From the IMG/VR virus record IMGVR_UViG_3300046660_000488, positions 62,001 to 126,000 of that record: DNA of 64,000 nucleotides; one strand, 5' to 3'. Positions 42,611 through 48,155 of this stretch are shown here, piece after piece. Every line of letters begins with the position of its first letter. Position 1 is the first letter of the stretch. Both the position numbers and the translations under genes were made by a program. The notes below the pieces were generated by a model, which made no database searches, was not told the DNA's origin, and was given only the letters and a program-made list of their open reading frames with translations.

Positions 42611-42686
42611 GCTAGTGTAGCTCAGTTGGTAGAGCGTCGGCTTGTGGAGTCGATTGTCGCGGGTTCGAGCCCCGCCGCTAGTTCCA
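42611..42686 (+). tRNA. tRNA-His(GTG) lacking G-1 (G1.U72, U73)
   Basis: TCGGC-TTGTGGA-GTCGA; base -1 is T. Confidence 0.9.
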
Positions 42687-42970: not shown

Positions 42971-43134
42971 GCAAGCCCGACAAGAAAAAGGCCAAGCTCC
43001 AATCGGCGATCACCGCGCTAGAGGCCAAGCTGCAACAGTCCCTCGGGAAGAAGGACTCGCGCACCGTTGAAATCGACGTCCCCGGCACTCTGCGTCAGAT
43101 TGCCGTCCTGAAGAAGCAATTGGAGGCCGTGTAA
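42967..43134 (+). CDS. Small basic coiled-coil protein (55 aa), not in ORF track
   Basis: ATGA and TAATG overlaps with both neighbours. Confidence 0.7.
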   Translation: MSKPDKKKAKLQSAITALEAKLQQSLGKKDSRTVEIDVPGTLRQIAVLKKQLEAV

Positions 43135-43412
43135 TGGCTGGCCGGATCGAAACGTATACGCACAGCGACAAGTCGGTTCCCAACAAGGGAGGCGCCATTG
43201 TCGCAGTCCGCTCGCAGACCGATTTCGCGGCCCGCACGGACGAGTTCATAGCCTTCGCCCAGAAGGTCGCCAAGATGTCGTTCGCGGCTCAGGCAACCAA
43301 CTGGGAGGACGTCACGGCCGCCTTCCCCGATTTGGAAGATGAGCGTGTCGCCCTGACGAAGGCGATCAAGGAAAAGGTCGAGATCGACCAGATCGTCATC
43401 CTGACGATCTAA
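43134..43412 (+). CDS. tsf: Minimal elongation factor Ts core subdomain (92 aa)
   Basis: GRIETYTH...GGAIVAVRSQTDFAARTDEFIAFAQKVA matches EF-Ts G.I.SYIH...GVLVEVNCETDFVARNEEF..LA; KEKVEI matches GENIKV. Confidence 0.8.
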   Translation: MAGRIETYTHSDKSVPNKGGAIVAVRSQTDFAARTDEFIAFAQKVAKMSFAAQATNWEDVTAAFPDLEDERVALTKAIKEKVEIDQIVILTI

Positions 43413-43416
43413 GAGG

Positions 43417-43524
43417 TCTGGGTTGACTGAGTGGTCATAAGGTTGATCGGATACTAGAGAGCGGAGGTGGGTGTACCGGCCCAACACCAAGGCTCACGTG
43501 GGTTCGAATCCCACACCCGGAACA
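43417..43524 (+). tRNA. Aberrant tRNA-like gene with intact acceptor/D/T arms and an expanded, unpaired anticodon region
   Basis: TCTGGGT/ACCCGGA acceptor; T arm GTGGGTTCGAATCCCAC identical to the Cys tRNA at 42252; no canonical anticodon stem. Confidence 0.6.
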
Positions 43525-43541
43525 TTTACGAGGACAAGGAC

Positions 43542-44160
43542 ATGTTGAGAGGCACGAGAATTCTGGAAGGCGACGAAGCCGTCGCCTACGCTAAGGTGAT
43601 CGACACGCTGCGGGTGTGTCTTCATTGAAGCTGGCTTCGAGGAAGTGATCCTTCCGGCGATCTGGGAACAGCAGACCTTCATTGATAAGGCTGGCCCCGA
43701 GATCGTCAACCAGATGTGGGCATTCAAGGACAAGGGCGACCGCCCTGTCTGCCTCATCCCCGAAGTCACCGGTCTCGTGCAAGAGACTTGGCGGGATACA
43801 TGGTCGAAGACGTGCAAGTCCAAGCGCATCTTCTACGTCTCCCGCTGCTACCGCTACGAACGCCCCCAAGCTGGGCGCTACCGTGAATTCACACAGTTCG
43901 GGGTAGAGTTGCTTGGGGACGTTCCCGGCGGGACCGAAGAGGTCAAAGGTCTGCTGATCGCCGTGCTCGACAAGCTCGGCCTCAGTTACCGGTTCAGCGA
44001 CGCGGTCAAGCGAGGCTTGACCTACTATGTCGAGGACGGCTTCGAGGTCGAATGTGAGAGCTTGGGCGCCCAGAAGCAGATCGCCGGTGGCGGTCGATAC
44101 GCGGAAGGGATCGGGTGGGCCATTGGTGTGGACCGCCTGCTGCTCGCGCTCTCGAAGTAG
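43542..44160 (+). CDS. hisS: Catalytic-domain-only histidyl-tRNA synthetase, made via +1 frameshift at 43620-43625 (205 aa)
   Basis: Frame-0 MLRGTR...TLRVCL joins frame+1 IEAGFEEVILP, gapless against HisRS motif 1; motif 2 RYERPQAGRYREFTQ; motif 3 GGGRY..GWAIGVDRL; no anticodon-binding domain. Confidence 0.88.
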
Positions 44161-44167
44161 TTTCTAT

Positions 44168-44243
44168 GGTGGTGGTAGTTCAGCGGTAGAACGCCAGACT
44201 GTGACTCTGGATGTCGCGGGTTCGATCCCCGTCCATCACCCCA
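44168..44243 (+). tRNA. tRNA-His(GTG) with canonical G-1:C73
   Basis: G-GTGGTGG/CCATCAC-C-CCA; CCAGA-CTGTGAC-TCTGG. Confidence 0.95.
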
Positions 44244-44994: not shown

Positions 44995-45699
44995 TCAGAT
45001 TTCGTCGCTATCCGGATCGAAGGTCTGGTTGAAGACCGACTTGATCTGCTGCGGATAGAACGCGATCCACCAGTCAGTCGGCTTGTACCCACGCGATCCG
45101 CCATCGGCCATGGTGTCGATCAGATGGATGCCGTCATAGCCCTCGCTGATCAGTTGCTGCTGGAACGCGGCGACGTCTTCGGTCTTGGATTTCACTCCGT
45201 CCGGCAGATGGTTCATGACGCGCGTCCAAGCATCGTTGGACAGCATTTCCTTCTGCTTGGCGTCGTAGGCCTTCCGGATGCGGTAGTAGTCGTTGTGGGG
45301 ATCGTTCTGGTCGAGGGTCTTGAGCTTTTGGGCCAGATCGCGAAGCTCTTCGAGGTCTTCGTCCCAGAGCCAATCGCCGCTCATCGCCAGCGGGCGCTTG
45401 ATCGACAGGAAGCACGGCTTGACGTTGGCGCCGGTCGCAGGCCCGGTCTCCGGGTGATAGCCCGCGAAATAGTTCGCCGTGTCCGGGCTGACGTCGAACC
45501 AGAACCCGAGGCGGTTGAAACCAGACCCGGCCGAGCCGAAGGCATGGTGCTTGAAGGTGGCGAAGTCTCGGAACGTGCCGTGGTAGCAGACCAGCGGCTG
45601 ACCTTGCTTGTCCACGACCTTAGAGCCCTTGAACCACGCTTGGAACGCAGGGTTCTCGGCGACGTTGGCTCGTTCCATGAGATTGATGTATTCGCGCAT
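44995..45699 (-). CDS. ADP-ribosyltransferase-like protein (ART-PolyVal type), late
   Basis: AFQAWFKGSKVVD..G.PLVCYHGT, GFWF, VKPCFLSIKRP, GYDGI, IAFYPQQIKS; TAAATA 5 nt upstream of ATG. Confidence 0.75.
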   Translation of the reverse strand: MREYINLMERANVAENPAFQAWFKGSKVVDKQGQPLVCYHGTFRDFATFKHHAFGSAGSGFNRLGFWFDVSPDTANYFAGYHPETGPATGANVKPCFLSIKRPLAMSGDWLWDEDLEELRDLAQKLKTLDQNDPHNDYYRIRKAYDAKQKEMLSNDAWTRVMNHLPDGVKSKTEDVAAFQQQLISEGYDGIHLIDTMADGGSRGYKPTDWWIAFYPQQIKSVFNQTFDPDSDEI

Positions 45700-45896
45700 G
45701 GTCGTATTTATGACCAAGCAAAAGGCTCCAGAACCGGTGGGGACCGTTCTGGAGCCTTCCGGGGATTATCCGGGGACCAGCGCCGTGTGTTGTTCAACGC
45801 TGGCCTGACGAGGCTCCCACGGGCCTCTGTGTCGGTCAAACGAAAACACCCGGCCCATTGCTGGACCGGGTGCAAGATTTCGTGACTGGCAGAGGC

Positions 45897-47998: not shown

Positions 47999-48073
47999 TG
48001 GCGCCTTCAGCCGGGCTCGAACCGGCGACCTACAGATTTAGAGTCTGCTGCTCTACCGCTGAGCTATGAAGGC
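47999..48073 (-). tRNA. Amber suppressor tRNA (CTA), G73
   Basis: GCCTTCA/TGAAGGC, GCAGA-CTCTAAA-TCTGT, GGTTCGAGCC, CCA encoded. Confidence 0.92.
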
Positions 48074-48079
48074 GTCCTT

Positions 48080-48155
48080 TGGTGATCACAGTCGGGCTCG
48101 AACCGACGACCCGCAGATTTAGAGTCCGCTGCTCTACCAACTGAGCTATGCAATC
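48080..48155 (-). tRNA. Amber suppressor tRNA (CTA), A73
   Basis: GATTGCA/TGTGATC, GCGGA-CTCTAAA-TCTGC, CCA encoded; TTGACC promoter upstream. Confidence 0.92.

What the first reader, a model, noticed from the sequence alone, without database searches (positions are those of the whole stretch)
43531..44160. Histidine-starvation-sensing +1 frameshift in a His-free, catalytic-domain-only HisRS
Seen: the RBS and ATG at 43542 open MLRGTRILEGDEAVAYAKVIDTLRVCL-H-stop, with sequence CGG GTG TGT CTT CAT TGA. The rest of HisRS is in the +1 frame (TTC ATT GAA GCT...), which is closed upstream by TGA at 43597-43599, so it has no own N-terminus. Shifting at CTT gives TLRVCLIEAGFEEVILP, which aligns without gaps to the HisRS motif-1 region (E. 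coli TLKNVLGSYGYSEIRLP, recalled from memory). The A-site codon at the shift is CAU = His, and the 205-aa shifted product contains no histidine at all. Established: prfB autoregulates by a +1 shift at CUU-UGA with an SD-like element 3 nt upstream (AGG GGG TAT CTT TGA), and hungry codons promote +1 shifts. Here GGGTG plus a 3-nt spacer precedes the CUU. Inference: the enzyme is made only when His-tRNA is scarce, an autoregulatory switch analogous to RF2. Caveat: a single-base sequencing error in the GTGTGT run would look similar but would not explain the His codon at the shift site or the His-free product.
Basis: partly seen in the sequence, partly recalled or inferred. Interest (0 to 1): 0.95.

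Follow-up and report, generated by a model that had tools for sequence, protein, structure and literature searches.

The report
Histidine-codon frameshift switch in mini-HisRS
A small phage-encoded histidyl-tRNA synthetase can be made only if the ribosome slips one base forward exactly where a histidine codon waits to be read; the signal recurs in about 80 related genes and looks like a built-in sensor of charged histidine tRNA.

Summary
ATG 43542 opens 27 codons, then CTT CAT TGA. The rest of a 205-aa HisRS catalytic core lies in the +1 frame (43624-44160), which is closed upstream by TGA 43597-43599.

It is neither a sequencing error nor a pseudogene. Of 118 homologous loci, 78 carry a +1 break, as do 5 copies in Paraburkholderia, Pseudomonas and a Burkholderiales MAG. 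These include the cultured Sinorhizobium phage Phosso.
- The break is always at [C/G]TT-CAY.
- It sits at four different columns of the protein, and shifted genes are interspersed with in-frame relatives in the tree.
- Codon periodicity flips exactly at the site.
- An SD-like GGAGG(T) lies 3 nt upstream, the prfB geometry. Mean anti-SD duplex energy is -8.9 kcal/mol, against -0.5 at the same column in in-frame homologues.
- GTT sites always have a strong SD-like element; CTT sites tolerate a weak one.
- Shifted proteins hold 2 His in 13,601 residues.

The protein keeps motifs 1-3 and HisA/HisB, lacks the insertion and anticodon-binding domains, and often abuts tRNA-His genes.

Best reading: a prfB-like programmed +1 frameshift whose slow A-site codon is the cognate His codon, giving feedback control by His-tRNA(His). 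The frameshift is well supported. The His response is inferred and untested. I found no prior report, and current annotations miss the frameshift.

The parts
43530..43534 (+). Initiation Shine-Dalgarno (GAGGA), 7 nt before the ATG
   Evidence: Read directly. Phosso has AGGAGG at the equivalent place.
43542..43622 (+). 0-frame N-terminal piece: 27 codons (M L R G T R ... L R V C L), ending with the P-site codon CTT
   Evidence: It is homologous to residues 1-27 of in-frame homologues. Among 56 unique sequences, third-position variability is highest in this frame (entropy 1.09/0.79/1.58 for positions 1/2/3).
43597..43599 (+). TGA that closes the +1 frame upstream, so the body has no N-terminus of its own
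43612..43617 (+). Internal SD-like element GGGTG(T), 3 nt (TGT) before the P-site codon
   Evidence: Anti-SD duplex energy is -6.3 kcal/mol. The family consensus is CGG AGG T at -9..-3. Shifted genes average -8.9, against -0.5 kcal/mol at the same column of in-frame homologues (p=3e-11).
43620..43625 (+). Shift site CTT CAT: CUU in the P site, CAU (His) in the 0-frame A site; C 43623 is the base skipped
   Evidence: TT-CA is invariant, with C/G before it and T/C after it, in 67 unique contexts at four protein columns. L008/L040 limit the shift window to GTT CAC.
43626..43628 (+). 0-frame stop TGA; the non-shifted product is a 28-aa peptide
   Evidence: The stop position varies in relatives, 1-13 codons after CAY.
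43624..44160 (+). +1-frame body: 178 codons plus TAG. It holds HisRS motifs 1, 2 and 3 and HisA/HisB, and no His codon
   Evidence: Pfam PF13393. NCBIfam hisS 9e-38 against hisZ 4e-20. PDB HisRS residues 34-158 and 243-318 align. An in-frame homologue folds with pLDDT 94.9 and best matches E. coli HisRS (TMq 0.89). Codon periodicity in the +1 frame is 0.80/0.57/1.57.
44169..44243 (+). tRNA-His(GTG), canonical bacterial type (encoded G-1, C73, CCA), 9 nt after the stop
   Evidence: ARAGORN; Rfam 66.5 bits; acceptor-end parse. A same-strand tRNA-His lies within 1.5 kb in 34 of 76 shifted loci.
42611..42686 (+). Second tRNA-His(GTG), without G-1, with G1:U72 and U73 (close to the alphaproteobacterial type)
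   Evidence: For the identity rules see PMC3064791.

Best explanation
The gene encodes a 205-residue histidyl-tRNA synthetase reduced to its class II catalytic core. It can be made only through a programmed +1 ribosomal frameshift.

Proposed sequence of events:
1. Ribosomes start at ATG 43542 and read 27 codons.
2. With peptidyl-tRNA(Leu) on CUU (in relatives, tRNA(Val) on GUU) in the P site, an SD-like element 3 nt upstream pairs with the 16S rRNA tail, as in prfB. The A site then holds the His codon CAU.
3. If His-tRNA(His) is plentiful, CAU is read and translation ends at a nearby 0-frame stop, giving a 28-aa peptide.
4. If His-tRNA(His) is scarce, the ribosome waits. The P-site tRNA re-pairs on UUC, base C 43623 is skipped, and AUU is read. 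Translation continues in the +1 frame through a body that contains no His codon and so is not itself stalled.
5. The enzyme would then recharge tRNA-His, probably the G-1:C73 tRNA-His encoded next to it, and shut its own synthesis down.

Shown here: the two-frame architecture, the exact site, its conservation and repeated origin, the SD-like element, the His avoidance, and the HisRS core fold and motifs.

Inferred: the dependence of shifting on His-tRNA(His), the enzymatic activity, and the feedback.
For: Frame break and signal:
- The same break is in Phosso, in 78 of 118 viral and metagenomic loci and in 5 bacterial copies.
- It is always [C/G]TT-CAY, at four alignment columns (42/45, 57, 69 and 201 nt after the G of the GTR motif).
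- The tree intersperses shifted and in-frame states. One clade with 98/88 support holds site A, site C and in-frame genes.
- Windows as narrow as 8 nt pin the site.
- Periodicity flips at the site.
- Synonymous positions are frozen: T at +2 and C at +3 are invariant, and G dominates at -7 and -4.

SD-like element and P-site slippage:
- The SD-like element is specific to shifted genes.
- GTT sites, which re-pair less well, always have a strong SD-like element (0 of 19 weak). Among CTT sites 15 of 48 are weak (p=2e-5).
- No downstream RNA structure is conserved, as in prfB.

Link to histidine:
- The A-site codon is CAY in 67 of 67 unique contexts and never CAR. The codon after the skipped base starts with AY in 56 of 56 shifted site-A genes, against 12 of 27 in-frame genes at that column (p=1e-9).
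- Shifted proteins hold 2 His in 13,601 aa. In-frame homologues hold 0.57% and window ORFs 3.06%. The Fisher test for genes with at least one His gives 8e-8.
- tRNA-His genes are adjacent.

Protein: HisRS motifs and fold.
Against: - There is no expression, proteomic or reporter evidence. Efficiency and its response to histidine are unknown.
- The invariant C at +3 also gives the slipped tRNA a G34:C pair, and Ile or Thr after the site is common even in in-frame homologues (12 of 27). Part of the CAY conservation therefore has other explanations.
- Twelve of 26 in-frame homologues are also His-free, so His avoidance is a family trait and not exclusive to shifted genes.
- Seven shifted genes have almost no SD-like element (L016, L018, L108 and others), and the window's own element is modest (-6.3 kcal/mol).
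- A core without the insertion and anticodon-binding domains may charge tRNA poorly or do something else.
- The bacterial copies have no tRNA nearby.
Confidence: 0.7

Rival explanations
1. A programmed but constitutive +1 frameshift. The cassette sets a fixed, low yield of the enzyme, or it translationally 'corrects' an old indel. The His codon is there only because C at +3 stabilises the slipped tRNA and Ile/Thr codons follow.
For: C at +3 gives G34:C re-pairing for both tRNA-Leu(GAG) and tRNA-Val(GAC) (reasoning). Codons starting with AY are already common at that column in in-frame homologues (12 of 27). His-free in-frame homologues exist.
Against: It does not explain why position +5 is never a purine in 67 contexts at four independent columns. 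It does not explain why the host gene is a HisRS next to tRNA-His genes. It does not explain why His is avoided far more strictly in shifted genes than in in-frame ones (2 of 65 against 14 of 26 genes with any His).
Confidence: 0.2
2. Two separate polypeptides. The 28-aa ORF is a leader, and the body starts by itself in the +1 frame. Current annotations assume this: the Phosso CDS starts at an internal ATG, and RefSeq WP_051374196.1 starts at a TTG.
For: In some loci the +1 frame is open far enough upstream to hold a start codon.
Against: Those start codons are not conserved. In the window the first one (GTG 43645) lies inside motif 1. In L008/L040 the +1 frame opens at the TTC itself, and in eight further loci (L009-L011, L014, L039, L048, L049, L051) the overlap window is only 17 nt, so no start fits. 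The 27 N-terminal residues are homologous to the N-terminus of in-frame homologues and are under purifying selection in frame 0.
Confidence: 0.03
3. A sequencing or assembly error, or a decaying pseudogene.
For: On a single sequence, one extra base would look the same.
Against: The identical architecture is present in 78 viral and metagenomic loci from different samples, in an isolate phage and in five bacterial loci (three isolate genomes, a complete megaplasmid and a MAG). The break sits at four positions. Both pieces are under purifying selection, and the nucleotide signal is conserved at synonymous sites. A genuine degraded copy (L038) looks quite different.
Confidence: 0.01
4. Quadruplet decoding by a dedicated tRNA with an expanded anticodon loop, reading for example CAUU, CACU or CUUC, instead of P-site slippage.
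For: These phages carry large tRNA arrays. ARAGORN reports a few odd tRNAs (L003, L010, L026) and Rfam finds a sub-threshold tRNA-like element at 43417-43522.
Against: Both tRNA-His genes of the window have normal 7-nt anticodon loops. The odd tRNAs are not consistently linked to the gene. The same cassette works in Paraburkholderia and Pseudomonas chromosomes or plasmids with no tRNA nearby. The SD-like element and the link between GTT sites and strong SD-like elements point to slippage. Reading a His at the junction would clash with the strict His avoidance.
Confidence: 0.03
5. The frame is restored at the RNA level, by transcriptional slippage or editing.
For: None specific.
Against: There is no homopolymer run at the site (CTTCAT). 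The conserved features (SD-like element at fixed spacing, P-site NUU, A-site codon) are ribosomal signals.
Confidence: 0.01

Closest known systems
prfB (release factor 2) autoregulatory +1 frameshift (AGG GGG UAU CUU UGA)
   Same: Both have a short 0-frame ORF, a CUU P-site codon that slips to UUN, and an internal SD-like element exactly 3 nt upstream (consensus GGAGG-U-nn here; L004 even reads AGGGGG TCT CTT). Neither needs a downstream structure. In both, the A-site codon is decoded more slowly when the gene's own product is lacking, which gives negative feedback.
   Different: The A-site codon here is a sense codon (CAY, His), not a stop, so the sensed species would be an aminoacyl-tRNA and not a release factor. 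GUU also serves as the P-site codon. The gene is a HisRS core. The site has arisen at several positions within one family.
Hungry-codon +1 frameshifting (Gallant) and yeast Ty1 CUU-AGG-C
   Same: The shift is a +1 slip of peptidyl-tRNA(Leu) on CUU, triggered by a slowly decoded sense codon in the A site (PMC5009743).
   Different: In Ty1 the slow codon is slow because its tRNA is constitutively rare, and the shift yields a fusion protein at a set ratio. Bacterial hungry-codon shifts were induced experimentally or are errors. Here the slow codon is cognate to the enzyme being made, and a bacterial SD-like stimulator is added.
Canonical bacterial histidyl-tRNA synthetase (HisS, class IIa)
   Same: Motifs 1, 2 and 3 and the HisA and HisB histidine-binding motifs are present. 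The best sequence and structure matches are E. coli and T. thermophilus HisRS.
   Different: It has about 205 residues against about 420. The insertion domain (T. thermophilus residues ~159-242) and the whole anticodon-binding domain are missing. It scores below the NCBIfam equivalog cut-off. It is essentially free of histidine.
HisZ (ATP phosphoribosyltransferase regulatory subunit)
   Same: It is a HisRS paralogue without an anticodon-binding domain, and RefSeq gives this name to the bacterial copies.
   Different: HisZ profiles score far lower than hisS (4e-20 against 9e-38) and the HisZ structure ranks only 25th. The catalytic motif-2 and motif-3 arginines and the HisA/HisB motifs are kept. 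The insertion domain is absent. No hisG is nearby; the neighbours are tRNAs.
Classical sensing of His-tRNA by His codons (his operon leader attenuation) and aaRS control by T-box or translational operators
   Same: Ribosome speed at cognate codons, or the charging state of the cognate tRNA, sets the expression of a gene in that amino acid's pathway.
   Different: Those systems act on transcription termination or initiation through RNA structure. Here the decision would be taken inside the coding sequence, by a change of reading frame.

Membership tests
prfB-type programmed +1 frameshift cassette | Full-length product needs a +1 shift between two overlapping ORFs, conserved among homologues | tested here: met
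prfB-type programmed +1 frameshift cassette | Slippery P-site codon CUU whose tRNA can re-pair in the +1 frame | tested here: met
   The P-site codon is CTT in 48 and GTT in 19 of 67 unique contexts, always followed by C. The window has CTT at 43620-22.
prfB-type programmed +1 frameshift cassette | Internal SD-like sequence 3 nt upstream of the P-site codon | tested here: met
   The consensus is CGGAGG(T). 76% of shifted genes reach -6 kcal/mol or stronger, against 4% of in-frame homologues at the same column. The window's element is GGGTG, at -6.3.
prfB-type programmed +1 frameshift cassette | A-site codon is the stop codon recognised by the gene's product (UGA/RF2) | tested here: not met
   The A-site codon is CAY (His). 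A stop follows directly in only 30 of 67 contexts. It works like prfB but is not a prfB member.
prfB-type programmed +1 frameshift cassette | Shift efficiency falls as the product's activity rises (autoregulation) | not testable with these tools
   This needs reporter assays under His limitation.
Histidyl-tRNA synthetase (class IIa HisS) | Class II motifs 1, 2 and 3 plus the HisA (RGLxYY) and HisB (GGGRY) motifs | tested here: met
   Alignment to T. thermophilus HisRS; invariant columns in A1 and A3.
Histidyl-tRNA synthetase (class IIa HisS) | Catalytic-domain fold of HisRS | tested here: met
   The model of in-frame homologue L017 has pLDDT 94.9. The best PDB hits are E. coli HisRS, with TMq 0.87-0.89.
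Histidyl-tRNA synthetase (class IIa HisS) | Insertion domain and C-terminal anticodon-binding domain | tested here: not met
   Only PDB residues 34-158 and 243-318 align. The protein ends after motif 3. TMt is about 0.5.
Histidyl-tRNA synthetase (class IIa HisS) | Score above the NCBIfam hisS equivalog cut-off | tested here: not met
   It scores 130 bits against a cut-off of 286.75. It is a core-only paralogue.
Histidyl-tRNA synthetase (class IIa HisS) | Forms His-AMP and charges tRNA-His | not testable with these tools
   This needs an enzyme assay.
HisZ | Best match to HisZ profiles or structure, and partnership with a short-form hisG | tested here: not met
   The hisZ profile scores 72 bits against a cut-off of 271.65 and below hisS. 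Structure 3od1 ranks 25th. The neighbours are tRNAs, an EF-Ts fragment and an ART domain, with no hisG.

The most novel reading that the evidence does not exclude
This would be a natural aminoacyl-tRNA sensor written into a coding sequence: a prfB-style +1 frameshift cassette whose 'hungry' A-site codon is cognate to the synthetase being made. A His-free mini-HisRS would then be produced only when His-tRNA(His) runs short, whether from starvation, host shut-off or tRNA-targeting defence.

The device has been invented or moved at least four times within one family of huge-phage and proteobacterial genes. In alphaproteobacterial hosts it may serve an orthogonal pair of mini-HisRS and G-1:C73 tRNA-His.
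Probability: 0.6. Interest if true: 0.92.

Novelty: new variant of a known kind. Interest (0 to 1): 0.88.

Why it matters
As far as I know, prfB is the only well-established regulatory +1 frameshift in bacteria, and hungry-codon shifting has been regarded there mainly as an error or a laboratory effect. The 2016 recoding review I searched lists no frameshifted aaRS.

If shifting here responds to His-tRNA(His), it would be:
- the first natural case, to my knowledge, of an aminoacyl-tRNA synthetase that autoregulates by recoding at its own cognate codon;
- evidence that the prfB cassette is a general, portable sensor of A-site decoding speed;
- evidence that huge phages monitor the charging state of the translation apparatus they bring along.

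It also has practical consequences. Gene callers mis-annotate these genes: the Phosso CDS starts at an internal ATG, and RefSeq calls the bacterial copies HisZ from a TTG start. The roughly 20-nt cassette would be a compact, tunable amino-acid-responsive switch. The 205-residue HisRS core is among the smallest HisRS-like proteins with all catalytic motifs. Cultured systems exist for testing: phage Phosso on S. meliloti, Paraburkholderia aspalathi, P. sprentiae and P. caffeinilytica.

Tried and rejected
- Other genes with the same cassette. Scans of the window and of all loci for an SD-like element, NTT and a frame transition recovered only the mini-HisRS sites plus a few ordinary gene junctions.
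- Downstream stimulatory RNA structure. RNAalifold on 39 site-A sequences gave 0 pairs.
- Promoters and terminators around the gene. No sigma-70-like promoter was found on either strand, and there is no terminator-like site on the + strand. The gene seems embedded in a tRNA polycistron.
- Special frameshifter tRNA. Both tRNA-His genes have 7-nt anticodon loops. The odd ARAGORN calls are not linked to the gene.
- Independent start of the body. Rejected; see the rival explanations.
- Prophage context for the bacterial copies. The neighbours are an F420-oxidoreductase-like protein, a pirin, a DUF4349 protein and a recombinase, which is not clearly phage.
- Literature. Searches found no report of a frameshifted HisRS, and the 2016 recoding review lists none.
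- Technical failures. The first tRNA-end parser had a wrong distance filter and was fixed.
- Read-through protein. The pieces were searched apart, and an in-frame homologue was folded instead.

Full report
**1. The observation**

The sequence is as described.
- ATG 43542 is preceded by GAGGA at 43530-34. It opens 27 sense codons ending in CTT (43620-22), followed by CAT (43623-25) and TGA (43626-28).
- The +1 frame is closed by TGA 43597-99 and then runs open from 43600 to TAG 44158-60.
- The +1 part matches Pfam tRNA-synt_His (E=5e-16), NCBIfam hisS (9e-38, well ahead of hisZ at 4e-20) and T. thermophilus HisRS in the PDB (1e-21).
- The first possible start in the +1 frame is GTG 43645, inside motif 1.
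- The 27 + 178 residue product has no histidine.
- The window is 100% identical to IMG/VR contig UViG_3300046660_000488, a 578-kb phage.
- The gene lies in a tRNA array. Two of the tRNAs are tRNA-His genes, one of them 9 nt after the stop.

**2. It is not an error or a pseudogene**

The cultured Sinorhizobium phage Phosso (469 kb) has a homologue that is 73% identical at the nucleotide level and carries the same break (GGT TGT CTT CAT CGA AGC TGA). Its annotators started the CDS at a non-conserved ATG in the +1 frame.

Scans of viral contigs and metagenomes gave 117 further loci. Of the 118 loci:
- 78 need a +1 shift;
- 33 are in frame;
- the remaining 7 are truncated or degraded.

Five copies from bacterial assemblies have the same break: Paraburkholderia aspalathi, P. 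caffeinilytica, P. sprentiae, Pseudomonas sp. Au-Pse12 and a Burkholderiales MAG. RefSeq annotates one of them as 'HisZ' from a TTG in the +1 frame.

In every shifted locus, the overlap between the opening of the +1 frame and the 0-frame stop holds exactly one frame-specific [C/G]TT-CAY. About 2.1 of 67 unique windows would be expected to hold one by chance; all 67 do. In L008/L040 the overlap is 8 nt (GTT CAC TGA), which fixes the site.

Among 56 unique site-A sequences, nucleotide variability peaks at 0-frame third positions before the site (entropy 1.09/0.79/1.58 for positions 1/2/3). It peaks at +1-frame third positions after it (0.80/0.57/1.57). Both pieces are therefore under purifying selection, each in its own frame.

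**3. Repeated origin**

The site occupies four different alignment columns, measured in nt after the G of the N-terminal GTR motif:
- 69 nt: the majority, including the window;
- 42/45 nt: seven loci;
- 57 nt: one locus;
- 201 nt: L025, L112 and L115, inside the conserved C-L-I-P-E motif, reading GTG TGT CTT CAT CCC TGA.

In a maximum-likelihood tree of the region common to all genes, shifted and in-frame genes are interspersed. At least 3 forced changes are needed for site A and 6 for the in-frame state on well-supported branches. One clade with 98/88 support contains site-A, site-C and in-frame genes. The cassette has been gained, lost or moved several times.

**4. Anatomy of the signal**

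The consensus over 67 unique contexts is C-G-G-A-G-G-T-n-n-[C/G]-T-T-C-A-[T/C].
- The third base of the P-site codon (T) and the skipped base (C) are invariant.
- Synonymous third positions of the two upstream codons are mostly G.

The upstream element pairs with the 16S rRNA 3' tail.

| Sequence set | Mean anti-SD duplex energy (kcal/mol) |
|---|---|
| Shifted genes | -8.9 |
| In-frame homologues, same column | -0.5 |
| Other positions in the same genes | -2.5 |
| Window (GGGUG) | -6.3 |
| prfB cassette, same measure | -10.7 |

The difference between site-A shifted genes (mean -9.2) and in-frame homologues gives p=3e-11. The 3-nt spacing is that of prfB.

GUU sites re-pair less well on UUC than CUU sites do, because of a C36·U mismatch. 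They always have a strong SD-like element (0 of 19 weak, mean -11.8). CUU sites tolerate a weak one (15 of 48 weak, mean -7.8; p=2e-5). That compensation is what P-site slippage assisted by an SD-like element predicts.

No downstream RNA structure is conserved. The 0-frame stop follows CAY directly in 30 of 67 contexts and otherwise lies 2-13 codons on (beyond the 14 codons examined in one), so it is not part of the signal.

**5. The link to histidine**

- The 0-frame A-site codon is CAT or CAC in all 67 contexts and never CAA or CAG. The codon read after the shift starts with A-pyrimidine in 56 of 56 site-A genes. In in-frame homologues that column is variable, with 12 of 27 starting that way (p=1e-9).
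- Shifted proteins contain 2 His in 13,601 residues, and 63 of 65 have none. In-frame homologues have 0.57% His and window ORFs 3.06%. Genes with any His number 2 of 65 against 14 of 26 (p=8e-8). All five bacterial copies are His-free.
- A same-strand tRNA-His lies within 1.5 kb in 34 of 76 shifted loci, often 6-30 nt away.

A caveat applies. The C at +3 also improves re-pairing of the slipped tRNA, and His avoidance is a family-wide tendency. The case for His sensing is therefore strong but circumstantial.

**6. The protein**

Alignment to solved HisRS covers residues 34-158 and 243-318 of the T. thermophilus enzyme. It retains the P-E-x-T segment, motif 2 (R-Y-E-R-P-Q-x-G-R-Y-R-E-F-x-Q), HisA (R-G-L-x-Y-Y), HisB (G-G-G-R-Y) and motif 3.

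The in-frame homologue L017 (215 aa, 63% identical to the window body in alignment A3) folds with pLDDT 94.9. It best matches E. coli HisRS (TMq 0.87-0.89), while HisZ ranks 25th. The insertion and anticodon-binding domains are absent. In cellular genomes, everything else that matched is full-length HisRS at 43% identity or less.

Canonical HisRS recognises mainly G-1 and C73 of the acceptor stem (PMC3064791). A core-only enzyme charging the adjacent G-1:C73 tRNA-His is therefore plausible, but this is inferred.

**7. Mechanism proposed**

See the best explanation above. It is a prfB-like +1 frameshift in which the slow A-site event is decoding of the cognate His codon, giving negative feedback through His-tRNA(His). 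I put the programmed frameshift at about 0.9 and the His-responsive feedback at about 0.65-0.7. Rivals are a constitutive shift, separate initiation, a sequencing error, quadruplet decoding and RNA-level correction. Each is weighed in the rival explanations.

**8. Comparison and novelty**

It works like prfB and like hungry-codon or Ty1 shifting, but it is not a member of either. It fails the defining stop-codon/RF2 feature. No paper in the searchable library reports a frameshifted HisRS, or any aaRS controlled by recoding, and the comprehensive 2016 review lists none. I rate it a new variant of a known kind, of high interest, with cultured systems available for a direct test.

Noticed in passing
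window 42611-42686 and 44169-44243; L003 2284-2357, L004 3701-3773, L006 2261-2336, L043 2118-2191: Two kinds of tRNA-His(GTG) accompany the gene. One is the canonical type with encoded G-1 and C73. The other has no G-1, a G1:U72 wobble and A73 (U73 in the window). The second matches the alphaproteobacterial identity set (PMC3064791). This suggests one tRNA for the host HisRS and one for the phage mini-HisRS, possibly an orthogonal pair. Eight further tRNA-His genes have G-1 with A73.
   Followed up: partly
window 43417-43522 (+): A tRNA-like element (Rfam tRNA 27.9 bits, just under the cut-off of 29) has good acceptor and T arms but 45 nt where the 18 nt of the model's anticodon-arm segment should be. 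It ends 20 nt before the mini-HisRS start codon. ARAGORN does not call it.
   Followed up: partly
window 43134-43412 (+): A 92-aa ORF matches only the first 75 positions of the EF-Ts family (PF00889, E=8e-11). This 'mini EF-Ts' sits just upstream, so the neighbourhood looks like a module of cut-down translation factors.
   Followed up: partly
window 47999-48073 and 48080-48155 (-): Two tandem tRNAs have a CTA anticodon (ARAGORN labels them Pyl). They are amber-suppressor-type tRNAs, which hints at TAG reassignment or read-through in this phage. The mini-HisRS body ends in TAG.
   Followed up: no
window 44995-45717 (-): A 240-aa ORF carries an ART-PolyVal ADP-ribosyltransferase domain (PF18760, E=1e-20).
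   Followed up: no
L199 3085-3696 (P. sprentiae WSM5005 plasmid NZ_CP017563.2); L001 3855-4445 (Phosso): Public annotations avoid the frameshift by starting the CDS at a TTG or ATG in the +1 frame. They name the product 'ATP phosphoribosyltransferase regulatory subunit' or 'histidyl-tRNA synthetase'. The conserved 27-codon N-terminus in frame 0 is left unannotated. The P. sprentiae copy sits next to a recombinase gene.
   Followed up: yes
L038 2856-3369: An AT-rich phage copy has an internal deletion of about 40 residues (the segment between motif 1 and motif 2) and a frame break with no CAY cassette. It is a genuinely degraded copy and a useful contrast with the programmed sites.
   Followed up: partly
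L003 2194-2276, L010 1179-1251, L026 5385-5452: ARAGORN reports tRNAs of undetermined identity with two-base 'anticodons' (unusual anticodon loops) inside the tRNA arrays of related huge phages.
   Followed up: no
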